This document shows, piece by piece, positions 2,243 through 36,544 of a stretch of DNA of 64,000 nucleotides (position 1 is the first letter of the stretch; the number at the start of each line of letters is the position of its first letter). The notes beneath the pieces were generated by a model. It did not search any database. It was not told where the DNA came from and was given only the letters and a program-made list of their open reading frames with translations. The translations under genes were made by a program, and so were the position numbers. The stretch lies in the IMG/VR virus record IMGVR_UViG_3300034072_001021, positions 195,141 through 259,140 of that record. One strand, written 5' to 3'.

Positions 2243-4138
2243 ATGTCCGTCAACGATCCGCACAACGGTCAAGAATCCGTGAACACTGGCGCCGAGCAGC
2301 GTCAAGACCGTGCAGCCCCTCAGCAGCAACAGCGTCAGGCCCCGGTGGTTAACTCCATCCTCGACCTGAACCGTCTCCTGGGTGGCGGCATGTCCCGTCG
2401 CACCAGCGGTGAACAACTGATCGCCGCCATCGCCGCCTGCAAGTTCTGGTTCTCCGCTGACCGTCAACTGGCCGCCGCCGGTGGCATCGATCTGACCAAG
2501 ATCCAGGTGATCGGCCTGGAAGCTTCCGAGCACAACGTCGAGGTCTCCTCGGTCATCCTGGCCTACCCGGTCGAGTCCCAGGGCACCCTGCGTGTTCTGA
2601 CTCACTTCCTGGCCCTGGAATCCAGCCTGGCTGAAGAGAACCAGGTCCGTACCGTCAACCTGAACCATCGCGACTACCCGCTGCCGGTAGTGGTCTCCGA
2701 CTACATGACCGAGTCCTACATGGCTCTGGTCGATGAGATCGTGAAGAAGCACTTCGAGCAGTCCCGTCGCAACGTCGAAGTACAGCGTGCCGGCTGGCGC
2801 ACCGTCTCCCGCAAGGTCAACTTCTCCGAGCCGGAAAGCACCGAAGCCCGCAACGTCGTGTTCTACGCCCAGGCGGCCATCGTGGCCATGTACAACCACG
2901 TCTACGAGCGTGACCTGTACTTCAGCCTCGAGTGGCTGAGCAAGAACTCCACCCTCGAGATCTCGGTCGACATGTCCGGCCGTGAGGCCCACAGCGCCGA
3001 TGGCCTGCCGCGCCGCCGCGACATCGCGGTGAACGTAGCCGGTAAGGTGGCCAAGGGCGACCAGACTGCTTCGGTTGGCCTGGCCAGCCTGGGTGGTTAC
3101 GTCAGCCTGATGTACTCGCCGCCCCAGGACGAAGACCGCTGGAATCGCAACGTCCGTCGCGATACCCCGTACTTCACTCCGACCCTGATCATCAACGCCA
3201 TCGACACCGGCACCAACAGCATCACTGCTGAGCAGCTGCTGCTCGGTCTGGCCGGCGCTTCGGTGATCAGCTCCAACCAGGCGTGGGCTCAGACCTTCCT
3301 GCCGGGCGAAGTTGCCCGCGGTGAGATCGACTACCGTGACACCGGCCTCCTGGGCCTGCTCGGTCCGGACAAGACCGCTTTCGAGATCGAAGCACGTACC
3401 AACCTCGACACCGACAAGTGGGGTCAGTACTTCTTCTCCCTCGTGAACGAGAACCTGGCCTGGGCTATCGAACTCGAGGAGGGTGGTGACAACTCCTGGA
3501 TCATGGGTCTGCTGCTCGACGCTGCTTCCGACACCAGCCCGAACCGTGACGCCGTACGTCGTCTGTACGACTTCGCCGATCGTCTGACCAACAACAACTT
3601 CTCCCGTCGCGCTGCCGAACTGGACGTCACCGTCCCGCTGCAGCTGTCCGGTGCCCGTTACCTGACCGGTACCTGGATCGACGAGCGTGGTGAAGAGCGT
3701 GACCTGCGCGAGTGGGATCTGCTCCGTTGGATGGCCCAGAACCCGACCGACGAAGGCACCTCGGCCCTGAACTACCAGGACGTCATCGACCGCGTCGACC
3801 TAGACGTGGAAGTGCGCGTATCCGAGCAGTTCACCCAGCTGACCAGTGCTCTGGGCGCGTCGAACGTGAAGTTCAGCCGCTACGTCGACCTGGCGTACAT
3901 CAATCCGAAGTTCATCCAGGCCCTGGCCGCTGCTGTGGCAGACTGCAAGATCAACATCGATCAGCGCAGCGCTCACTACAGCTTCGGCGCTCGTCGTCTG
4001 CGTGGCAACACTCGCATCCGCGATTTCGTGGGTGGCGACCTGACCAACGGCATGCTGTCCAGCCGTCGGATCGGTGGCAACGAGCGTTCCCTGCGTGGTC
4101 ACGTGGGCAACGGCTTCGGCCATGGTTCGTCCTTCTAA
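2243..4138 (+). CDS. chmA: chimallin, phage nuclear shell protein
   Basis: 631 aa with a Q-rich flexible N-terminus; GTWIDERGEERDLREWDLL and NPKFIQAL match motifs recalled from known chimallins; directly upstream of the nvRNAP beta'-N gene; strong codon bias. Confidence 0.88.
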   Translation: MSVNDPHNGQESVNTGAEQRQDRAAPQQQQRQAPVVNSILDLNRLLGGGMSRRTSGEQLIAAIAACKFWFSADRQLAAAGGIDLTKIQVIGLEASEHNVEVSSVILAYPVESQGTLRVLTHFLALESSLAEENQVRTVNLNHRDYPLPVVVSDYMTESYMALVDEIVKKHFEQSRRNVEVQRAGWRTVSRKVNFSEPESTEARNVVFYAQAAIVAMYNHVYERDLYFSLEWLSKNSTLEISVDMSGREAHSADGLPRRRDIAVNVAGKVAKGDQTASVGLASLGGYVSLMYSPPQDEDRWNRNVRRDTPYFTPTLIINAIDTGTNSITAEQLLLGLAGASVISSNQAWAQTFLPGEVARGEIDYRDTGLLGLLGPDKTAFEIEARTNLDTDKWGQYFFSLVNENLAWAIELEEGGDNSWIMGLLLDAASDTSPNRDAVRRLYDFADRLTNNNFSRRAAELDVTVPLQLSGARYLTGTWIDERGEERDLREWDLLRWMAQNPTDEGTSALNYQDVIDRVDLDVEVRVSEQFTQLTSALGASNVKFSRYVDLAYINPKFIQALAAAVADCKINIDQRSAHYSFGARRLRGNTRIRDFVGGDLTNGMLSSRRIGGNERSLRGHVGNGFGHGSSF

Positions 4139-15929: not shown

Positions 15930-15948
15930 CTAGAGTTCCTTGTTTGAA

Positions 15949-15981
15949 TTTTATTCAGCGATACATTATTCATACGGTAAG
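15949..15981 (+). promoter_or_regulatory. putative early promoter (ATACAT core at 15961)
   Basis: TTTTATTCAGCGATACATTAT upstream of the nvRNAP beta-C gene. Confidence 0.65.
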
Positions 15982-16011
15982 CTAATAATACCGATGTGTA
16001 AGGGGCACACA

Positions 16012-18210
16012 ATGAGTGACGAAAACCCAGACTATCATCAACTGTCGTCGTATGACGGCAACGTTCAGCTTCATCCGGAGCTGATGTCGTTGTATGGTCT
16101 CAATCCATTCATTCGTCACATCTCGGCTTCTCGAGCTGCGATGTTTACGAACAACCTTTCTCAGATGGTCGTCATCAAGAACCCGATGGCCAAACGCATC
16201 ATGTCCGGCATGGAGCGTCCGTTCGGGGAGACCACCTGTTCCATCGAATTCACCGATGATGTCGAAATTCTCGAAGTCATCCCACGATTCGCCCACACGG
16301 CAGGTGCTAACCGCATCCGCCATTCACCGCAAACAGCGGTGATCTACGAGAACCACGAGACCCACAAGATCGGCGTCAAGATGATTGTCGATTACCACAT
16401 CTCGCACCAGCACTTTGGTACCGAGTTCGTGCGTAACCGCGATGTCATCGACCAGCTGCGCCGCGGTGCACGGTTCCGTAAGGGCACCAAGCTCGCCCGT
16501 TCGCCATTGATCGATGATAATGGCAACTACTGCTACGGTCGTGAGACCAACGTGCTCATGTGCTCTGACGTGGCAGGGACTGAAGACGGCGTTAAGGTAC
16601 GCCGTGGCTACATCGAACAAATGGCTCCTACCGGTTTCGAGACCCGTGTCTTCGAGTTCGGTCGTGAGTACTTCCCCATCAATCAGTCTACTGTACCAGG
16701 CCAGTACAAGATCTTCCCGGACATTGGTGAACGTGTAAACAGCAGTGGTCTGCTGGTGGCTCTGCGTCGTTATGACCCCATCAGCGCCGTGGCCAACATG
16801 ACCAACGAAGCGCTGCTGCAGCCGGACTACATCTTCGACCGCAAACGTTTCGTGCAACACCTGGATGCGGAAGTGGTCGACATCAAAGTCGAACGCAACA
16901 CGTCCATCAATATCCCGCCCTTGCCAGTCGGGATGGAAGCGCAGTTGTTGAAGTACTACAACGCTGACACCGAGTTCTATCGGAAGATCGTTGACGTCTG
17001 GATGGATCTGCGTAAGAAGTGCAACCAGCGCAAGATCCAGCTGGAGCTGGAAGACGAGTTCAGTCAACTGGTGTACGAAGCTATCGGTCGTGTAGGGCCG
17101 GACTATCTGCGCCATGACGGCGGTTTCGGCCGTAGCGTTGATGAAACCATCAAGGTGGACAAAGTCTACCGTGGTGTCAAGATCGATGCCTGGCGCGTGG
17201 AGATCAAGTTCAAGTACCTGTCGATCCCCAACAAGGGCTACAAGATCACCGATATCGACGGCGACAAGTCCGTAGTGGTAGAGGTGGTTGATGATGAAGA
17301 CATGCCGCGCGATGAGAATGGCGTGGTGGTTGACATCGTCGTAGACCCCAACTCTCGCTGGAACCGAGTAACTCCGGCATCCCCCATCGAGATGGTGATC
17401 GGTGCATCTGGCCGTGATCTGGGTAAGCGCATCCAAGCCTCGTTCGGCTACGACATGAATGTCCAGCTGAAAGAAGAAGAGTGCGAAGATGCGGTGTATC
17501 GTCCTGAGAACCTCGAACTGGTCAAGGCAGCTTATGCTGAACTGCTCGAGTACTACAAGGTCGTAGCGCCATTCCAGTACGAAGACATGACAGATCCTGA
17601 GTTCCTGGCGAAGAACCCGGAGCACATGTACGATCATGTCAAGTCCGTGCTGCTGGATCACATGTACGGGCTGTATCTGTACATGCCGACCAACAACCCA
17701 GTCCATATGCCGACTGTGATCTCGACGATCCGCAAGCGCTGGCCGCCGTTCATTACCCCGGTGCGTTTCCGTGGTCGTGATGGCAAGATGAAAGTATCGC
17801 GCGAACCGATGCTGATCGGTCCGTCGTACTACATCAACCTGGAGAAGACCGCAGAAGACTCCTGGATGGCCGCTGCATCGTCGCGTTGCAACGTGTTTGG
17901 CACTACTGCGCGTCTGAGCAACAACGACAAGTACGACTCTCCCGGCCGCGAGTCCGGTATCCGAGTCGGCGAGTCTGAGATCCGCTCTGAGTCTGCTTAC
18001 TGTGGCGGTGAGGCAATTGCCGATCAGAAGGATGCCAGTAACAACCCGATTGCCCACAAGTTCGTGGCGCGTCGTGTACTTACCCATCCGACACCGACCA
18101 ACATGGAAGAGGCGCTGGATCGCAAGATCGTACCTGTGGGTGGTCATCGTCCGCTGGCATACATGCGGCACATGTTCGCATGCTCCGGTAAAGAACTGAC
18201 CAACGAATAA
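16012..18210 (+). CDS. non-virion RNA polymerase beta C-terminal subunit (phiKZ gp71-73-like)
   Basis: GTEDG, GYKITDIDGDKSVV, VDPNSRWNR, GIRVGESE correspond to conserved beta regions; RBS AAGGGG before ATG 16012. Confidence 0.92.
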   Translation: MSDENPDYHQLSSYDGNVQLHPELMSLYGLNPFIRHISASRAAMFTNNLSQMVVIKNPMAKRIMSGMERPFGETTCSIEFTDDVEILEVIPRFAHTAGANRIRHSPQTAVIYENHETHKIGVKMIVDYHISHQHFGTEFVRNRDVIDQLRRGARFRKGTKLARSPLIDDNGNYCYGRETNVLMCSDVAGTEDGVKVRRGYIEQMAPTGFETRVFEFGREYFPINQSTVPGQYKIFPDIGERVNSSGLLVALRRYDPISAVANMTNEALLQPDYIFDRKRFVQHLDAEVVDIKVERNTSINIPPLPVGMEAQLLKYYNADTEFYRKIVDVWMDLRKKCNQRKIQLELEDEFSQLVYEAIGRVGPDYLRHDGGFGRSVDETIKVDKVYRGVKIDAWRVEIKFKYLSIPNKGYKITDIDGDKSVVVEVVDDEDMPRDENGVVVDIVVDPNSRWNRVTPASPIEMVIGASGRDLGKRIQASFGYDMNVQLKEEECEDAVYRPENLELVKAAYAELLEYYKVVAPFQYEDMTDPEFLAKNPEHMYDHVKSVLLDHMYGLYLYMPTNNPVHMPTVISTIRKRWPPFITPVRFRGRDGKMKVSREPMLIGPSYYINLEKTAEDSWMAAASSRCNVFGTTARLSNNDKYDSPGRESGIRVGESEIRSESAYCGGEAIADQKDASNNPIAHKFVARRVLTHPTPTNMEEALDRKIVPVGGHRPLAYMRHMFACSGKELTNE

Positions 18211-18244
18211 TCGGGAGGGGCAACCCTCCCTCATGGAGATAACG

Positions 18245-20335
18245 ATGCGTCGAATCACTGCACGCAGTTTCATGAACCTCGACATCCATGCGATGTGGCC
18301 ACTGCCTGATGAAAAGATGGAAGTGGAATTCGATGACGGTGTCATCGAGACCAACACTCGCCGCATGGTGCTGAGCTGGTTCTGTTGGGAACTGCATCGT
18401 AAGTTCCCACTCACCCCGTTGAACAAATCCCACTATGTGGGCAATGGGTTCCCGAGTGCGGACATGGTGCCGAAAACCATCTCCAACATCGTCCACGACC
18501 TCCACTACACCTACTTCGGTGACGGTCATCCTGAGATCCGTGATCACGATGCTGTGTATGATCGTGAAGAGGTATGGCGGGTCGTTAAGGATGTAGGTAA
18601 CGAGATCTACAACGTCCTGTCGATCAACCTGGAAGAGTGGCAAGTATCGATCAACGCGTTCCATCTGGACGAGCTGTTCTGGTACGAACCTATCGTCAAG
18701 ATCCGCGACTCGCTGGAGCCTACCCAGATCTCCATCAGCCATGCGCTCGATGCAGCTGGGCAGATCCTGATGAAAGATCCGGCGATTCTGCACAACCCGA
18801 TCGTTCGGGGCCTGCGCAGTAAGCAGATCAAGATGGGCCAGTTCCTGCAGATCCTGGTGTGCCTGGGCTTCCGAGACGACCTGGATCAGACCATCTTCCG
18901 GAAGCCGGTGATCAAGGGCTTCTATGAAGGTCTGACCACCTTGCACGATATCATGATCGAGTCGTGCTCGGCCAAGAAGGCGCTGATGTTCACCAAGAAG
19001 CCTCTGCAGATCGTAGAGTACTTTAACCGTAAGATGCAGCTGTCTACGGTGGTGGTCGATAAGCTCCTCTGGGAAGACTGTGGGTCGGATCGCTACTCCG
19101 AGATCTACGTGGACTCCGTGATCCTGCCGCACCTGGAAGGTAAGCTGTACCTGGGCTCCAATGGTAAGCTGACGCCGGTACGTCAAGATGACCACAAGCT
19201 GGTGGGTAAAACCATCAAGATGCGCTCTGCGTTCAACTGCAAGCATCGTGGCGAAGGGGCTGTCTGTCGTGTCTGCTTCGGTGAACTGGCTTGGTCGATT
19301 CCTCGCTTCACTTCCCTCGGTCACACCTGTGCTACCGAACTGTGCCGTGAGGGTTCTCAGCGTACGCTGTCCGTCAAGCACTTGGACGGTAGTTCGATGG
19401 TGGAGGTCATCGAGATCCCGGAAGAGTATCAGTCGTACATCGAAGTCTGCGCAGCCAACACCGACGCCGATGGCGATGGTAACGTGGAACTGCAAGTGGA
19501 CGTCGAGCTACTCGGTGAAGAGATCCCGCAGAGTGCCGATGAAAGTTCGCTGATCAAGTTCAACTCGCGTATCGCCAAGATGACCCCCATGCTCATCCTG
19601 AAGTCGACTCCCGAGAAGAATATCGAGAACGCGTCCAACCTGGTGAACCTGAACAAGGACACCAACATCAAGCACCTGAACATCCATCGCTTCACTGCGT
19701 TCCGTGAAGTGCAGTTGCGGATGGTCAACCTGCGTGAAGAAGCCACTGAGGTCTACGTCCCGGTAAGCCAGGGTGCCCGTCTGGGTTCCTTGACCCGCCT
19801 GCTCCTGAACCACATTCAGGAAAATGGCTACACTGTCGACGAGAACGGTGACTTCTGCATCGACCTGAGCAACTGGGACTTCTCGTCCCCGGCGTTCAGC
19901 CTGCCGCGTCGTCATGCCAGTACGCTGGACTTCATGGCAGAGGTCGAGGCATTCATTCGCTCGCCGTCCAAGAAGTCTGAGCGCAATGGCTTTGCTGGCC
20001 GTATGCTCACCAGTTACACCGACCCTGTGACGGCACTGGTAGACTTCAGCGATCTGGTCAACTCAAAGCTGCGTGTTAACATCGCGCCCTTGGAGGTAAT
20101 CCTGCTGAGTCTCATGCGTCCTGCCGATGATCCTGACGACTATAACCTTCCGGATTACGATCGCCCGATCAAGTTCGAAGAACATCGTCGGCTGATCCAG
20201 GAACGCTCCGCTGGCCAGATCTTCGCCTACGAACGGCAACCGGACTACATCGAGGATGTCAACGCGTATTCGCCGCACAAGCGCACGCCCGGCCTGCTCG
20301 ATCCGTTTGTGTTCCCTGAGGTGATCAATACCTGA
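18245..20335 (+). CDS. non-virion RNA polymerase beta' C-terminal subunit (phiKZ gp74-like)
   Basis: EYFNRKMQL bridge-helix region, EDCGS, RSAFNC..VCRVCFG Zn site, QRTLSVKH trigger-loop region. Confidence 0.92.
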   Translation: MRRITARSFMNLDIHAMWPLPDEKMEVEFDDGVIETNTRRMVLSWFCWELHRKFPLTPLNKSHYVGNGFPSADMVPKTISNIVHDLHYTYFGDGHPEIRDHDAVYDREEVWRVVKDVGNEIYNVLSINLEEWQVSINAFHLDELFWYEPIVKIRDSLEPTQISISHALDAAGQILMKDPAILHNPIVRGLRSKQIKMGQFLQILVCLGFRDDLDQTIFRKPVIKGFYEGLTTLHDIMIESCSAKKALMFTKKPLQIVEYFNRKMQLSTVVVDKLLWEDCGSDRYSEIYVDSVILPHLEGKLYLGSNGKLTPVRQDDHKLVGKTIKMRSAFNCKHRGEGAVCRVCFGELAWSIPRFTSLGHTCATELCREGSQRTLSVKHLDGSSMVEVIEIPEEYQSYIEVCAANTDADGDGNVELQVDVELLGEEIPQSADESSLIKFNSRIAKMTPMLILKSTPEKNIENASNLVNLNKDTNIKHLNIHRFTAFREVQLRMVNLREEATEVYVPVSQGARLGSLTRLLLNHIQENGYTVDENGDFCIDLSNWDFSSPAFSLPRRHASTLDFMAEVEAFIRSPSKKSERNGFAGRMLTSYTDPVTALVDFSDLVNSKLRVNIAPLEVILLSLMRPADDPDDYNLPDYDRPIKFEEHRRLIQERSAGQIFAYERQPDYIEDVNAYSPHKRTPGLLDPFVFPEVINT

Positions 20336-22672: not shown

Positions 22673-22696
22673 TAGGGAGGGGTCATCCCCTCCCTA
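22673..22696 (+). terminator. hairpin without U-tract
   Basis: TAGGGAGGGG-TCAT-CCCCTCCCTA. Confidence 0.55.
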
Positions 22697-26958: not shown

Positions 26959-28260
26959 TTAGGTAAAGGCCTTATGAAGATCGAGTTCGGCCGTTTTCAG
27001 TTCCTTAGCGTGCGCCGAGGCCATCATGATATCCATGAACTTCGATGCGACAGAGGTGTTTTCAGCAGCCAGACCAAACGGAAGTGCAGCCAATGCCTCG
27101 CCTGCGCACTTAGCACAGAAACCATCGCCCGGCGTCTTACAGAATGCAGGCGAACGAGTCAGCACTGACTTACCTTCGAGTGATTTGGCACGGGCTTCAT
27201 CGAGCAACACCACTCCTTTATCTGTGATTTCCCACAGACCGGCGTAGTATTCGCCTTGACCCGGTTCGATATTGCGAACAATACCCAACTTGCTGCCACA
27301 ATCGTCCTCTGCAATGCTGGTGTTCTGGAACACACGCATGAAGAACTTCACGGCTTCACCGCCGAGAGCGGTCAGAGCACCACGATAGAAGGAACCGGCA
27401 CGAGTGGAGTTGAACATTGGCACTACTTTGGAGGTATCCCAGCCTTCGTTCAGGCTATTGACCACCAGTTCAGCGCTACCGCCCTCGTTAAAGCCAGCTT
27501 CAGGACCGTGAATCAGGAACATACGCTTACGAGCAGTGCCGAAAGTCTTGTTGGAAATCAAGAAACCCTCGGAAGGGTCGTCTTTGATCCACTTACGATC
27601 CATGTCGATCAGCTCATTCTGAATTTTCGAGACGACTACCGGGTCATGGAGACGATCTTCGTTCTCTTTCAGGCGCTGAGCACGCACATCTTTAACTTTC
27701 GGGTCGGTAGTCAGTGCTTTAGGTGACAACGTCGGCACAAAAAGCTGCACGAAACCAGCCAGAGCACCCACACAACGACCAAATCGCATGTACATCTTGA
27801 CCGGAATCTGGTCTTCAGTCGGTTCGACACCTGAAATCTCCGGATCATCGACCAATTTCTTGGCAATGATGCGCTCGATAGCCGAAATACTACACGGACC
27901 GACTTGATAACTGATGCGTTTACCGAACGGTTCGACCAGAGCGATCCAGTTGAACAGCAAATCGCCGTATGTGGAGGTCACTTCAGCCTCACAATTGGGA
28001 ATTGTGTCCGGTGTTACGGTAATTTGATCAGCCGGATAGTAGAGAGGGGTCATCGGCTTGGAACCATCGACCACAACCCACTCGTTTCCGTGATCGAGAG
28101 GTACGTACATCTCAGTGCTGTTGACGTTGTAGCGCACGTCGTAGGGTTGAGGCACGTAATCCTTCGGATCTTTGACGACACTGAACGCCCGAATGACCCA
28201 TTCCTTCCGGGCGTAGGCTTTTGCTTGCAGTGCCTTTACATAAAGCTCTTCGCGATTCAT
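26959..28260 (-). CDS. virion RNA polymerase beta' middle subunit (phiKZ gp80-like)
   Basis: EDDCGS, RSPAFC...FCAKCAG Zn site, bridge-helix-like GSFYRG...GG. Confidence 0.88.
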   Translation of the reverse strand: MNREELYVKALQAKAYARKEWVIRAFSVVKDPKDYVPQPYDVRYNVNSTEMYVPLDHGNEWVVVDGSKPMTPLYYPADQITVTPDTIPNCEAEVTSTYGDLLFNWIALVEPFGKRISYQVGPCSISAIERIIAKKLVDDPEISGVEPTEDQIPVKMYMRFGRCVGALAGFVQLFVPTLSPKALTTDPKVKDVRAQRLKENEDRLHDPVVVSKIQNELIDMDRKWIKDDPSEGFLISNKTFGTARKRMFLIHGPEAGFNEGGSAELVVNSLNEGWDTSKVVPMFNSTRAGSFYRGALTALGGEAVKFFMRVFQNTSIAEDDCGSKLGIVRNIEPGQGEYYAGLWEITDKGVVLLDEARAKSLEGKSVLTRSPAFCKTPGDGFCAKCAGEALAALPFGLAAENTSVASKFMDIMMASAHAKELKTAELDLHKAFT

Positions 28261-31622: not shown

Positions 31623-31654
31623 AGGCAGGGGGTAAATCCCCCTGCTTTCTATTT
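31622..31654 (+). terminator. intrinsic terminator
   Basis: GCAGGGGG-TAAAT-CCCCCTGC plus TTTCTATTT. Confidence 0.7.
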
Positions 31655-33311: not shown

Positions 33312-33764
33312 ATGGAAATGTTCCTCGGTGTAAAGATCGTCGCAGCCAAACCCATGACCCGTCTGGAATACAACCAGTACCGTGGATGGGAACTGCCTAA
33401 GGACGAGCGTGGTGATGATGAAGGTTATCTCGTCGAGTACTTCGAGAGCGAACCCAACCATCCAGACCACAAAGGTTACATCAGCTGGTCTCCCAAAGAG
33501 CAGTTCGATAAAGCACATTACTCCATGGGCTTTGTGGGCGACCTACCTCCGTTCATTCAACGAATTCATGGTGAAGCTGCACAGCTCGTGCAAAACTGCA
33601 CCAAGATCACTGACTTCATTACCAAGTGCAATGAAGGACAGATCGAGAACATCAACCCACAGTACCTCGACCTCATGATTCGCCAACGTGCGGTCATGGA
33701 GACCCATCTGGGAATCCTGCGTGATCGTCTCGAAATGCTCGCTAAAGGGAAATCCACCCTATAG
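33312..33764 (+). CDS. two-domain candidate anti-defence nucleotide-sponge protein
   Basis: N-domain GVKIVAAKPMT..Y..YRGW..EGYLVEY..YISWSPKEQFDKA; C-terminal helical hairpin LMIRQRAVMETHLGILRDRL. Confidence 0.8.
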   Translation: MEMFLGVKIVAAKPMTRLEYNQYRGWELPKDERGDDEGYLVEYFESEPNHPDHKGYISWSPKEQFDKAHYSMGFVGDLPPFIQRIHGEAAQLVQNCTKITDFITKCNEGQIENINPQYLDLMIRQRAVMETHLGILRDRLEMLAKGKSTL

Positions 33765-33777
33765 TGTGCATATTACC

Positions 33778-34390
33778 GAAATACGAGTAATGGCAGAACA
33801 GACGGCAGCTATCACGGCGGCTTAAGGTGTTCTGTAAAGGGGTGGTTCCCGTTCCGTTACTGGTTTATCTTGAGATATACTCTGCCAATGGCTGACTGAC
33901 CGAGTGCACACTCCCTCAGGCTTCTGTAGCAAGAGAAGAACACAGCCAAGGGGCGGCGTTCTCAAGATTACAGGTGTTGGCTTCACCCAGCATCAAGTCC
34001 CAACGATTTATGGTAGCTTAAGTTCGAAGCGCCGATCGCCATTGTGCAGATAAGGCAGCGCGGATCGGATTGGGAGATTCCCGGTCGGCTACCACCCGTT
34101 AGGACATCCGTGTCCTTGATTCCATGTCAGTCGGCAACAGCTCTTCGTGGCAGTTCGCATTCAACGACTCGGCAGCCTACGTGGCGGCCAACTGGATAGA
34201 GGCACGGGTGTCCGTCTAAATCGGCAGACCTCGTGAGCTGTTGATCCAACCGACAACGATCAGAAACCTCCCTTCGTCGGGCGGCCAGATAGGTCATTAG
34301 TTGGTTGAAGACTCAGGGTGCCATCAGAACTGCACCCATGTACGCAAGTACATACCGAGGGGTTAAAGTCCCAAGCTCTGGCTCGTTTTC
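33778..34390 (+). ncRNA. candidate large structured RNA B (about 610 nt)
   Basis: Closing helix 33778-33787/34382-34390; helices 33867-33875/33960-33968 and 33891-33900/34126-34135; ends 3 nt before tRNA-Asn; no ORF of 60 aa or more in any frame. Confidence 0.7.
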
Positions 34391-34393
34391 AAT

Positions 34394-34468
34394 TCACGCT
34401 TAGCAAAGTGGTAATGCAGCAGACTGTTAATCTGCCTACCCCTGGTTCGAATCCAGGAGCGTGAGCCA
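34394..34468 (+). tRNA. tRNA-Asn (GTT)
   Basis: Acceptor TCACGCT/AGCGTGA, anticodon arm GCAGA-CTGTTAA-TCTGC, TTCGAAT loop, encoded CCA. Confidence 0.95.
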
Positions 34469-34469
34469 T

Positions 34470-34650
34470 ATCCGTAAACTACTGTTTCGACAGGAGGGGT
34501 GAAAATCCCAACACGGTGTCCCAGAAGTACCGGCGTAAGCTGGGTTCTCCGGGCCTTAACCTAGCTGGTTGACTGGTCGGTGCTTTGCATCTAAGTCCGC
34601 TTCAGGACATCAACTATAAATAGGGCTGGAGACAGCCCCATTTATTCTCT
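34470..34650 (+). ncRNA. candidate structured RNA C ending in a GNRA terminator-like hairpin
   Basis: GGGG-TGAAAAT-CCC T-loop-like element, GGC-GTAA-GCT, GGGCTG-GAGA-CAGCCC then T-rich. Confidence 0.4.
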
Positions 34651-34670
34651 TTCGTCAGAAAGGGAAGAAT

Positions 34671-34796
34671 TCAAGTGATTGGAAACCGTGCACCGTGTGA
34701 TTCGGGCTTAGCCTTAAGACACCATTAACGTCTGAGGGGTGATCCTTTACAACCGCATCTGCAGTTGTGGTGGTTTGACTCCACCCGCTTGTCTCA
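34671..34796 (+). ncRNA. tRNA-like element with expanded core
   Basis: T-arm GGTGG-TTTGACT-CCACC (34769-34785); CAAGTG/CGCTTG acceptor-like pairing. Confidence 0.35.
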
Positions 34797-34800
34797 AACC

Positions 34801-34887
34801 GGGGAGCCCCCAGAGGGTGCTAATCTAGCCCGCTACATCCGTACTCTCCCGTCGGGTACACCAGGGTGTCTGGCCTGCTCCCCACCT
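34801..34887 (+). pseudogene. degenerate tRNA-like element
   Basis: Perfect 7-bp GGGGAGC/GCTCCCC followed by ACCT; internal CCCG/CGGG and CCAG/CTGG stems; no TTC loop. Confidence 0.45.
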
Positions 34888-34892
34888 ATTTC

Positions 34893-34966
34893 GCCTCTAT
34901 AGCTGGAAGGTCAAGCAGCTCACTTGTAATGAGCCGATCTCAGTTCGATTCTGAGTGGAGGCACCA
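34893..34966 (+). tRNA. tRNA-Thr (TGT)
   Basis: Acceptor GCCTCTA/TGGAGGC, anticodon arm GCTCA-CTTGTAA-TGAGC, TTCGATT loop, encoded CCA. Confidence 0.95.
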
Positions 34967-34970
34967 TATT

Positions 34971-35341
34971 GGGACTGATCGGCGTCGTCACTGGTTATTC
35001 TGAAACCTAAATGCGCAAGCACATGGTTATGGATATAAACGATCAACGAAAGTGAAGTCGTTGCAATGACGAACGATCAGCCCCTCTCAAGCGCGCTTGT
35101 AAGAATGTACTCGGTTGCCGATCCAAAGTAACCCTCGTAAGGTGAATTCAGCGTATAGACCTCAGGATGAGGGAAAATGCCCGGACACGAGAGGAACACA
35201 TTCTTACAAGTGGATTATTTACCGTGTAGTCTCTCAGGCGGGACACTCTCCACAGGAGCCTTCGGCACCACCACCCCACCCTATAGTGACTGGTGACCTG
35301 TTGGTGTGGAGAGGCATGTTCGATTCTAGTGCACGGTACCC
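34971..35341 (+). ncRNA. candidate structured RNA D (about 370 nt, tmRNA-sized, tRNA-like ends)
   Basis: Starts 4 nt after tRNA-Thr; 13-bp perfect helix 35096-35108/35198-35210; GNRA and UUCG hairpins; GGGACTG/CGGT(A)CCC end pairing. Confidence 0.6.
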
Positions 35342-35477
35342 TATTTCGATGATCGGCCTCGACTGCTGGCAGTGTGCCCTCAGGGTTGTGGAGATAACCT
35401 GAACGGATGACGGCAGTAAGGGCGGTGTCCACTACCCTAGAAACTTGGGTCATCGAACGAACAAAAGGACAGTGAAT

Positions 35478-35933
35478 GTGAAATGGGTCACCTGGATCGT
35501 TTCGTTATTGTTCGTGTTTGTCATGCACTACGCCGACGCTTACCCTCTCACCGAGATCAAACTTCTCAGTGATGACGTGACCAGCGTTTATGATGGCGAT
35601 ACGCTCACTGTCCAAGTGCCCTACATTCCAGACGTGTTTGGTAAAGACCTCTCCATCCGGATTGTGGGTATTGACACACCTGAGATGCGTAGTACGTGCG
35701 CAACTAAGGAACAACGTGATCGTGAGAAAGCTTTGGCCATCAGGGCCAGAGACGTAGTGGTTGCCATGGTTACATCGGGTCATCGAGTGACCCTGACCAA
35801 CCTCGATCGAGATAAATACTTCCGTATGCTAGCAAGTGTTTATGTCGACGGACGAAGTGTTTCCGATGAGCTGATAGCTCAAGGACTAGCCGTCCCTTAT
35901 TCAGGCGACACCAAGATAGGCTGGTGTGGCTAA
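35478..35933 (+). CDS. thermonuclease (SNase-like) with N-terminal signal/TM anchor
   Basis: VYDGDT, IRIVGIDTPE, DKYFRMLA, LIAQGLA; hydrophobic WVTWIVSLLFVFVM; GTG start after AAAGGA. Confidence 0.9.
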   Translation: MKWVTWIVSLLFVFVMHYADAYPLTEIKLLSDDVTSVYDGDTLTVQVPYIPDVFGKDLSIRIVGIDTPEMRSTCATKEQRDREKALAIRARDVVVAMVTSGHRVTLTNLDRDKYFRMLASVYVDGRSVSDELIAQGLAVPYSGDTKIGWCG

Positions 35934-35985: not shown

Positions 35986-35995
35986 AATGGAGGTT

Positions 35996-36544
35996 ATGAT
36001 GGGTAAACTAACGGGCTGGACTGTCGACGACGAGGAAGAAGTATTCGTTCCCTGTCCAGACTATCCAGACCTTTTCGACATAGGTTCTAAAGGGACTCTT
36101 AGAAGCCGCCGTACTGGTAAAATCTTATCCCAAACCCCTGACCATAAAGGCTACCTTAGACATGCCACTAAAATAGGCGGTCGTTCAGGTAAGTCGATTT
36201 GCGTAAGGGTTCATGTTCAGGTTGCTAAAGCATTTGTTGGAAGAGAATCTGACGATCTGCAAGTAAACCATCTGACAGGCGATAAGGCAAAGAACGATTA
36301 TACATCTCTCGAATGGTGCACTGGTAGTCAGAACTTAGAGCATGCACATGCTACTGGCTTAATGCGTAATGCCAAGGGAGTTGACCATCCATTAGCAGCA
36401 CTTTCTCCCGAAGATGTTGCGGTTATACTTTCTCTTAAAGGGAAGGTTAGTCAGAGAGAACTCGGAAGAAGATTTGGGGTAAATAAATCAACCATAGCCA
36501 GAGTCCATAATGGAATCGGTTATGGTGAAGAAGACCCTAGCTAG
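35996..36544 (+). CDS. free-standing HNH homing endonuclease (NUMOD4-like N-terminus, HTH C-terminus)
   Basis: VHVQVAKAF..QVNHLTGDKAKN..LEWCT..QN; C-terminal SQRELGRRFGVNKSTIARV. Confidence 0.88.
   Translation: MMGKLTGWTVDDEEEVFVPCPDYPDLFDIGSKGTLRSRRTGKILSQTPDHKGYLRHATKIGGRSGKSICVRVHVQVAKAFVGRESDDLQVNHLTGDKAKNDYTSLEWCTGSQNLEHAHATGLMRNAKGVDHPLAALSPEDVAVILSLKGKVSQRELGRRFGVNKSTIARVHNGIGYGEEDPS

What the first reader, a model, noticed from the sequence alone, without database searches (positions are those of the whole stretch)
33778..34390. RNA B: about 610-nt closed, pseudoknotted multi-domain RNA abutting tRNA-Asn
Seen: the two ends pair (GAAATACGAG 33778-33787 with CTCGTTTTC 34382-34390, 9 bp with one bulge). 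ATCTTGAGA/TCTCAAGAT (33867/33960) and GCTGACTGAC/GTCAGTCGGC (33891/34126) cross each other, implying a long-range pseudoknot. Additional stems include CAGAACA/TGTTCTG, TGGTAGC/GCTACCA, CCGATC/GATCGG and GTAC-GCAA-GTAC. The size is in the ROOL/OLE/GOLLD range, but I recognise no diagnostic motif.
Basis: partly seen in the sequence, partly recalled or inferred. Interest (0 to 1): 0.8.

Follow-up and report, generated by a model that had tools for sequence, protein, structure and literature searches.

The report
Modular structured RNAs beside phage tRNA
The 610-base stretch is real, conserved, folded RNA that no database describes. It looks like a string of separate folded modules ahead of a tRNA gene in a nucleus-forming Pseudomonas jumbo phage, not one closed, knotted giant RNA.

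Summary
The window is a 259-kb jumbo phage related to Pseudomonas phage pPa_SNUABM_DT01. It encodes chimallin and split RNA polymerase subunits.

Relatives show strong compensatory change on the + strand:
- Module A (33770-33874): 17 of 23 pairs changed on both sides.
- Hairpin B (33867-33968): its outer stem has 9 of 9 pairs swapped in DT01.
- Hairpin C, and three-way junction D (34006-34104).
- Module E (34098-34220): 21 of 30 pairs changed across 13 sequences.

Three claims do not hold:
- The "closed" end pairing is no better than in shuffled sequence.
- The long-range pseudoknot is at chance level, is not kept in DT01, and both its arms sit in conserved local helices.
- The RNA is not one fixed unit. 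Close relatives lack A+B or the 3' third, have D and E in reverse order, or carry E alone just before a tRNA array.

My best reading is a tRNA-island transcript made of autonomous structured RNA modules, separated from tRNA-Asn by RNase P. That mechanism is inferred. The function is unknown, and no transcript data settle it.

The parts
33770..33874 (+). Module A, a 5' three-way junction. P1 is roughly 33787-33793 with 33854-33861. P2 is CAGAACA 33794-33800 with UGUUCUG 33828-33834. P3 is the small hairpin GGG 33840-33842 with CCC 33848-33850, inside the invariant AAAGGGGTGGTTCCCGTTCC at 33836-33855.
   Evidence: Covariance model R1 scores 87 bits here. It scores 52-105 bits in L006, L020/L012/L015, L016 and L035, and 12 bits in DT01. 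87.6% of cells are paired, against 38-52% when partners are slid. 17 of 23 pairs change on both sides, and 0 of 500 shuffles match this.
33867..33968 (+). Module B, a long branched hairpin. Outer stem is AUCUUGAGA/UCUCAAGAU. Inner stems are CUGA/UCAG and GAGU/ACUC. The sequences UACUCUGCC and GGGGCGG are conserved.
   Evidence: The DT01 homologue is L029:7104-7209. The outer stem keeps 9 of 9 pairs, all changed on both sides. The inner stems keep 4 of 4 pairs each, with 2 compensatory pairs each. The comparison rests on two sequences.
33973..34011 (+). Module C: hairpin GGUGUUGG-CUUCAC-CCAGCAUC, then the conserved single strand AAGUCCCAACGAUUUA.
   Evidence: In DT01, 8 of 8 pairs are kept and 4 change on both sides. 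The loop CUUCA and the tail GUCCCAACGA are conserved.
34006..34104 (+). Module D, a three-way junction. Closing stem is GGUAGCU/GGCUACC, followed by ACC(C). It has a variable hairpin (CCGAUC/GAUCGG) and a conserved hairpin GAUUGGGAGAUUCCCGGUC.
   Evidence: Model R3 scores 111 bits here, 54-110 bits in L012, L037, L035 and DT01, and nothing elsewhere. 20 consensus pairs, 3 of them compensatory. It is highly conserved in sequence.
34098..34220 (+). Module E, a long stem (GGACAUCCGUG/CACGGGUGUCC) enclosing three small helices. It includes GGCAGCC-UACGU-GGCGGCC.
   Evidence: Model R2 finds 13 distinct sequences. 88.2% of cells are paired, against 35-44% when slid. 21 of 30 pairs change on both sides, and 0 of 500 shuffles match this. 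Inner helix E2 (34129-34133 with 34165-34169) is 76% paired.
34214..34355 (+). Module F, hairpins seen only in the window's own lineage.
   Evidence: Predicted by minimum-energy folding only. It is absent from DT01 and L012. No diverged homologue was found, so it is untested.
34356..34380 (+). Motif G, GAGGGG-UUAAAG-UCCCAAGCUC, just before tRNA-Asn.
   Evidence: Similar motifs lie before the tRNA in L035 (GGAGAGGUGAAAGUCCUCAGC) and L006 (GAGGGGUAGAUCCCGUUCC), and after tRNA-Asn in the window at 34494-34511. This is sequence resemblance only.
33778..33788 (+). 5' arm of the predicted terminal stem. Its partner is 34381-34390.
   Evidence: It is in the minimum-energy fold with pair probability 0.79-0.96. 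The duplex is no better than in shuffled sequence, and DT01 has no counterpart.
34381..34390 (+). 3' arm of the predicted terminal stem, 3 nt before tRNA-Asn.
34394..34468 (+). tRNA-Asn (GUU) with an encoded CCA. Its 5' end defines the likely 3' end of the RNA.
   Evidence: ARAGORN and Rfam, 66.8 bits. A strain variant replaces the sequence from 34395 onward.

Best explanation
RNA B is the leading part of the phage's tRNA-island transcript. It is a head-to-tail string of independently folding RNA modules on the + strand: A, a three-way junction with an invariant 20-nt core; B and C, hairpins; D, a three-way junction; E, a long branched hairpin; and F/G, which are specific to this lineage. These modules behave like the tRNA genes around them. 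Each is a self-contained unit that is kept, lost, duplicated or reordered among DT01-like nucleus-forming Pseudomonas jumbo phages. Recombination around free-standing HNH endonuclease genes probably helps drive this.

Shown: the modules, their structures, their strand and their mosaic inheritance.

Inferred: the string is transcribed together with tRNA-Asn. Host RNase P cutting at the tRNA 5' end (34393/34394) frees its 3' end. Modules D and E end in a G-started stem followed by ACC, so they may also be cut out as separate small stable RNAs.

The function is not known. My guess is stable small RNAs, or processing and stability elements of the tRNA precursor. Because the island sits next to an anti-defence (Sequestin) gene, a role against host defences is possible.
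For: Structure:
- Covariation supports A, E, and B and C. D has consensus pairs.
- Many G-U pairs appear in + strand helices, and folding is asymmetric between strands. This fits RNA on the tRNA strand.

Modularity:
- L012 carries C(part)-D-E at 97% identity, without 33778-33999 and without 34227-34610. The adjoining ORF is only 83% identical.
- Metatranscriptome contigs show another A+B deletion variant, and a variant in which everything after 34395 is replaced.
- DT01 has A-B-C-D-E and then tRNA-Asn, with no F/G.
- L035 has A-B'-G, a disrupted tRNA-Asn, an HNH gene, and then E-D. Its sister contig L037 has an intact tRNA-Asn followed by E-D.
- L015 lacks about 230 nt that L006 has.
- In DT01 and five other lineages the E match ends 4-8 nt before the first tRNA of an array.

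Other points:
- No tRNA-like score is found inside RNA B at E up to 10.
- Sequestin is an experimentally shown anti-Thoeris sponge family, and the upstream gene carries that domain.
Against: - No direct transcript evidence. The runs were contigs without direction, and some probably hold phage DNA.
- Module A, where present, is always first in the string. Its 20-nt core is invariant for an unknown reason, which could reflect a tertiary or protein contact that ties modules together.
- The minimum-energy fold closes the ends with high probability.
- F and G could not be tested.
- RNase P cutting at D and E is inferred from a sequence pattern only. ACC follows the stem in 5 of 5 D sequences but only 6 of 13 E sequences.
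- B and C rest on two sequences.
Confidence: 0.6

Rival explanations
1. One reading: one closed, pseudoknotted RNA of about 610 nt that works as a single ornate machine, in the manner of ROOL or GOLLD, possibly forming multimers.
For: - Size, phage origin and position beside a tRNA match what is reported for GOLLD and ROOL.
- The overall fold z-score is -3.8.
- The terminal stem is in the minimum-energy fold.
- Module A is always the first element in the lineages that have it.
Against: - The terminal duplex is at chance level.
- The pseudoknot is not conserved, and its arms are used in local covarying helices.
- Module content and order differ among close relatives, and homologues range from 230 to 613 nt.
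- There is no match to the ROOL or GOLLD models.
Confidence: 0.15
2. A purely cis-acting leader. The modules are not products in their own right. They are structures in the precursor that protect it from nucleases or guide correct cutting and folding of the downstream tRNAs.
For: - In DT01 and five other lineages the E match ends 4-8 nt before the first tRNA.
- G-type motifs flank tRNA-Asn on both sides.
- phiKZ tRNAs have their own early start sites.
Against: - In L035 and L037, E and D lie after the tRNA-Asn gene and about 140 nt or more before the next tRNA-like gene.
- L016 has A and E with no tRNA in 2.4 kb.
- The conserved internal loops of E and the invariant core of A suggest specific recognition beyond a simple protective hairpin.
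Confidence: 0.15
3. Decayed tRNA genes: the region is debris from an old tRNA array with no present function.
For: - It lies inside a tRNA island.
- A clear half-tRNA remnant exists nearby at 35266-35376.
- Module D has a 7-bp G-started stem, then UA, and ends in ACC, like an acceptor stem.
Against: - Helices are maintained by compensatory change across lineages whose flanking proteins are 57-65% identical.
- D-E are more conserved than the neighbouring gene.
- No tRNA model score at E up to 10.
Confidence: 0.05
4. DNA-level elements such as a replication origin, promoters or homing sites, rather than RNA.
For: - It is part of a 1.7-kb non-coding block.
- A 13-nt exact direct repeat lies at 33754 and 35276.
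- An HNH gene lies nearby.
Against: - Pairs are kept through G-U wobbles that would be A-C mismatches on the other strand.
- Base composition is ordinary.
- No iterons were found.
Confidence: 0.03

Closest known systems
GOLLD and ROOL RNAs (large ornate bacterial and phage RNAs)
   Same: They are large, highly structured and non-coding. They are often in phages or prophages and next to tRNA genes, with which they may be co-transcribed (PMC5737381). Their function is unknown.
   Different: There is no match to their Rfam models. [quoted passage not shown] Here the units are hairpins and three-way junctions with no conserved pseudoknot. Content and order vary between close relatives. The hosts are Pseudomonas jumbo phages.
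Stable RNA species 1 and 2 of the phage T4 tRNA gene cluster (from my own knowledge, not checked here)
   Same: They are non-tRNA stable RNAs encoded among phage tRNA genes and made from the same precursors. The T4 cluster also holds a homing endonuclease gene (segB) and is mosaic among relatives.
   Different: The T4 RNAs are about 120-140 nt each. No sequence or structure comparison was possible with the tools. Processing of the present RNA is untested.
Non-tRNA hairpin substrates of bacterial RNase P, such as the 4.5S RNA precursor and phage P1/P7 C4 RNA (from my own knowledge)
   Same: Modules D and E are G-started stems. They are followed by ACC in 5 of 5 D sequences and 6 of 13 E sequences. 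This resembles the stem-plus-RCC signal.
   Different: Cleavage is not shown, and the pattern is not universal in E.
tRNA genes and pseudogenes in phage tRNA arrays
   Same: Same location, same strand, and the same unit-wise gain, loss and shuffling.
   Different: No cloverleaf, and no tRNA model score.

Membership tests
ROOL (Rfam) | Scores against the curated ROOL covariance model | tested here: not met
   No hit at gathering score or at E up to 10 in the window. None at E up to 1 in six related loci.
ROOL (Rfam) | [quoted passage not shown] | tested here: not met
   The conserved units are hairpins and two three-way junctions. The one proposed pseudoknot is not conserved.
ROOL / GOLLD | Found in phages or prophages, near tRNA genes | tested here: met
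   It is in a jumbo phage, 3 nt from tRNA-Asn.
GOLLD (Rfam) | Scores against the curated GOLLD covariance model | tested here: not met
ROOL / GOLLD | Forms RNA-only multimeric assemblies (cryo-EM papers found) | not testable with these tools
   Needs biochemistry or cryo-EM.
tRNA or tRNA pseudogene | Cloverleaf detectable by the Rfam tRNA model or ARAGORN | tested here: not met
   Only the two annotated tRNAs score, and nothing within 33765-34393 does at E up to 10.
Phage tRNA-cluster stable RNAs (T4 species 1/2 type) | Encoded within a phage tRNA gene cluster on the tRNA strand | tested here: met
Phage tRNA-cluster stable RNAs (T4 species 1/2 type) | Co-transcribed with tRNAs and released as stable RNA by host processing enzymes | not testable with these tools
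   The only run data were undirected contigs.
RNase P hairpin substrates | Stem starting at G+1, followed 3' by R-C-C | tested here: inconclusive
   D: GGUAGCU...GGCUACC + ACC in 5 of 5 sequences. E: ACC in 6 of 13, AUC in 2 of 13, other in 5 of 13. Cleavage is untested.

The most novel reading that the evidence does not exclude
DT01-like nucleus-forming jumbo phages carry a previously undescribed class of structured RNA genes embedded in their tRNA islands. These RNAs would act in trans. They might be decoys or sponges for host factors that recognise tRNA-like RNA, such as tRNA-cutting defence nucleases or RNase P. Alternatively, like ROOL and GOLLD, they might be building blocks of a higher-order RNA assembly, nucleated by the invariant core of module A.
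Probability: 0.15. Interest if true: 0.85.

Novelty: new variant of a known kind. Interest (0 to 1): 0.58.

Why it matters
Large structured RNAs beside phage tRNA genes, such as GOLLD, ROOL and the T4 stable RNAs, have had no known function for decades. This set has at least three covariation-supported modules that are in no RNA database. It occurs in a clade that includes a cultured phage of Pseudomonas aeruginosa (pPa_SNUABM_DT01), so deletion, probing and processing experiments are feasible. Natural variants that lack single modules already exist, which gives ready-made comparisons. The position next to a proven anti-defence gene family, in a phage that shields its DNA inside a protein nucleus but must export its RNAs, raises the possibility of an RNA-level role in the contest between phage and host.

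Tried and rejected
- Rfam at gathering and permissive thresholds, on the window and six relatives: only tRNAs.
- blastn of the region against 50,697 GenBank phages: only the ORF and tRNA-Thr matched. Module-by-module blastn against the fetched loci was too insensitive, so covariance models were needed.
- Self-comparison of 33700-35500 for internal duplications: none beyond 13-18 nt.
- Flanking Sequestin-fusion protein as a synteny probe: most homologues are in unrelated small phages without the RNA. The 535-aa neighbour worked instead.
- The 17-mer and 19-mer of module A in viral, metagenome and genome collections: found only this phage clade plus chance hits in coding DNA.
- Second copy of module A in the window: none. 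L006 does have one.
- Modules A and E around the phiKZ tRNAs: none. Module D was also searched there with default filters and gave nothing.
- CCACCCTATAGTG as a general promoter motif of the window: no.
- Sigma-70 promoter and terminator scan: at background level.
- Long-range pairing of the invariant GGGGUGG with ACCACCC (34091), as in the minimum-energy fold: rejected in favour of the local P3 hairpin. L035 changes GGG/CCC to GGA/UCC.
- Read laying: contigs only. The table of variant letters was cut off before RNA B, so the 90%-identical variant contig (33801-34275) could not be used for covariation.

Full report
WHAT THE WINDOW IS. The window belongs to IMG/VR contig IMGVR_UViG_3300034072_001021, which is 259,140 nt long. 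It encodes a chimallin-type nuclear shell protein (2243-4138) and split RNA polymerase beta subunits. It is therefore a nucleus-forming jumbo phage. Its nearest cultured relative is Pseudomonas phage pPa_SNUABM_DT01: a 535-aa neighbouring protein is 63-64% identical.

RNA B lies in a 1.7-kb block without credible ORFs (33765-35444). The block sits between a gene carrying a Sequestin domain (33312-33764) and a staphylococcal-nuclease-like gene (35445-35933). Sequestin is an experimentally shown anti-Thoeris sponge family. The block also holds tRNA-Asn (34394-34468) and tRNA-Thr (34893-34966) on the + strand.

CHECK OF THE OBSERVATION. The + strand folds better than shuffled sequence (z -3.8), while the - strand gives z -1.9. 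No Rfam family other than tRNA matches the window, even at E up to 10, or six related loci at E up to 1.

- The duplex between the first and last 35 nt is -14.7 kcal/mol. Dinucleotide shuffles average -14.9, and 49% are at least as good.
- A 10-bp complement with at most one G-U arises 0.8 times per shuffle. The region has 3, and 7% of shuffles reach that.

FINDING RELATIVES. GenBank phages gave nothing for the RNA by blastn.
- The protein next door led to a syntenic contig, L006. Its RNA shares an exact 20-nt block, AAAGGGGTGGTTCCCGTTCC.
- Searching for that block found L012, L015, L019, L020 and L016 in metagenomes. In viral contigs and genomes it found only chance hits.
- The 535-aa neighbour then opened the whole clade: DT01 (L029), L030-L037 and L038-L052.

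THE MODULES AND THEIR SUPPORT.
- Module A (33770-33874) is a three-way junction made of P1, P2 and a small hairpin P3 inside the invariant block. Across seven sequences, 87.6% of cells are paired, against 38-52% when partners are slid. 17 of 23 pairs change on both sides, and no shuffle reaches this. L035 changes P3 from GGG/CCC to GGA/UCC. This favours the local hairpin over the long-range pairing that the minimum-energy fold draws.
- DT01 has 412 nt between a small ORF and tRNA-Asn (L029:7016-7427), and this lines up with A-B-C-D-E.
Two inner stems have 2 compensatory pairs each.
- Module C: hairpin C has 4 compensatory pairs.
- Module D (34006-34104) is found in four lineages, five sequences in all with the near-identical L012 copy. 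It has 20 consensus pairs, 3 of them compensatory, and is highly conserved in sequence.
- Module E (34098-34220) is found in 13 distinct sequences. 88.2% of cells are paired, against 35-44% when slid. 21 of 30 pairs change on both sides, and 0 of 500 shuffles match. The stem of E has 7 compensatory pairs between the window and DT01.
- Many pairs are kept as G-U on the + strand, so the selected molecule is RNA of the tRNA strand.
- F (34214-34355) has no diverged homologue and rests on folding alone.
- Motif G (34356-34380) resembles motifs that sit just before the tRNA in L035 and L006, and just after tRNA-Asn in the window.

THE PSEUDOKNOT. Its 5' arm (33891-33900) lies in B, where CUGA/UCAG covaries. 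Its 3' arm (34126-34135) overlaps helix E2, which is 76% paired across 13 sequences, against 14-60% when slid. By my reading of the aligned DT01 segments, only about 5 of the 10 positions would pair there. E also occurs without any B in L012, L016, L030, L032, L033, L035, L037, L039, L043, L046 and L047. I therefore regard the pseudoknot as a chance complement.

NOT ONE FIXED RNA.
- L012 has a cassette whose ORF is 83% identical to the window's. Its C(part)-D-E segment is 97% identical, yet it lacks 33778-33999 and 34227-34610. L005, whose ORF is 91% identical to L012's (its protein is 91% identical to the window's), does have the start of module A. L012 therefore looks like a recent deletion form.
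- Contigs from public runs show another variant that joins the 5' leader to 33992. They also show a strain in which everything from 34395 to 34617 is replaced by 576 other bases, so the 3' limit of RNA B is a mosaic boundary.
- DT01 lacks F and G.
- L015 lacks about 230 nt that L006 has.
- L035 has A-B'-G, then a tRNA-Asn broken by an HNH endonuclease gene, then E followed by D. This is the reverse of the D-E order in the window. Its sister contig L037 has an intact tRNA-Asn, no A-G, and again E then D.
- In L030, L032, L033, L039, L043 and L047 there is no module A. Instead there is a terminator, a conserved promoter-like hairpin, a small hairpin, E, and then the tRNA-Tyr that starts an array. 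In all but L039 the E match ends 4-8 nt before that tRNA; in L039 the match is only 15.6 bits and is not counted.
- phiKZ itself has none of these modules around its tRNAs.

HOW IT MOST LIKELY WORKS. The modules behave like the tRNA genes around them, as self-contained units in an array. The simplest reading is one precursor transcript carrying modules and tRNAs.

It is established knowledge that bacterial tRNA 5' ends are made by RNase P. A cut at 34393/34394 should therefore free the 3' end of RNA B. This step is inferred, not shown.

D, and in part E, end in a G-started stem followed by ACC. This is the kind of signal RNase P uses on hairpin substrates, so they may be released as separate small RNAs. 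This too is inferred.

The function is unknown. The invariant core of A suggests a specific partner, either protein or RNA. The neighbourhood (a Sequestin sponge, a nuclease, HNH genes, variable content) is that of an accessory or anti-defence island. The available run data cannot show transcription or transcript ends, because they are undirected contigs and some probably hold phage DNA.

COMPARISON WITH WHAT IS KNOWN. The RNA shares phage origin and tRNA adjacency with GOLLD and ROOL. It fails their models and lacks a conserved pseudoknotted multi-junction core. The closest functional analogy, from my own knowledge, is the pair of stable RNAs in the T4 tRNA cluster. It is not a tRNA remnant by any score, although a true half-tRNA remnant lies nearby.

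VERDICT. This is a real and undescribed set of structured RNA modules.

Noticed in passing
window 34469-34892: The spacer between tRNA-Asn and tRNA-Thr is also structured (z -3.3). It starts with a small three-way junction carrying GAGGGGUGAAAAUCCC. It holds a terminator-like hairpin at 34623-34638 that is a mosaic boundary in two other strains. Its 3' half (34668-34774) has diverged homologues in L015:712-831 and L012.
   Followed up: partly
window 33754-33766 and 35276-35288: An exact 13-nt direct repeat, CCACCCTATAGTG, brackets the whole ncRNA/tRNA island. It is not a general motif of the window. The first copy overlaps the stop codon of the upstream gene.
   Followed up: partly
window 35266-35376: A degenerate copy of the 3' half of tRNA-Thr plus its trailer (GTTCGATTCT, TGATCGGC.TCG).
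   Followed up: partly
window 35987-36544; L035 13410-13958: An HNH/NUMOD4 endonuclease gene. A homologue with the same upstream region sits inside a broken tRNA-Asn in L035, L036 and L048, while the sister contig L037 has the intact tRNA.
   Followed up: partly
window 33312-33764: The upstream gene carries a Sequestin (PF21825) anti-Thoeris sponge domain in its C-terminal half. Relatives of its N-terminal half carry DUF2829 (PF11195). Relatives carry 263-289-aa fusions of the same kind.
   Followed up: partly
window 2243-4138, 15940-20335, 26959-28260: A chimallin-like nuclear shell protein and split RNA polymerase beta subunits. The phage belongs to the nucleus-forming jumbo phages.
   Followed up: no
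L015 225-306: A tRNA-like element right after the short RNA. It has a normal D arm and T arm, a GAAA tetraloop where the anticodon loop should be, and no matching acceptor 3' strand. It scores 29.3 bits, at the tRNA threshold.
   Followed up: no
L033 12700-12835 (also L030, L039, L043, L047): A conserved hairpin, AATCGTGTAAAAAAATACACGAT, followed by TATAGTCTATGTGAAG. It lies between a terminator and module E and is a candidate promoter of the tRNA island in relatives that lack module A.
   Followed up: no
L029 8106-8304; L016 (minus strand) 1778-1975; L012 2842-2961: Another conserved non-coding element (GGTCCATCC...GACTACGGT...). It is 95% identical between DT01 and a compost contig and lies at different places in the island.
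   Followed up: no
window 31629-31640, 22679-22689: G+C-rich hairpins of the form GGGGT..ATCCCC directly after gene ends. They look like terminators and are unrelated to the module A motif.
   Followed up: no
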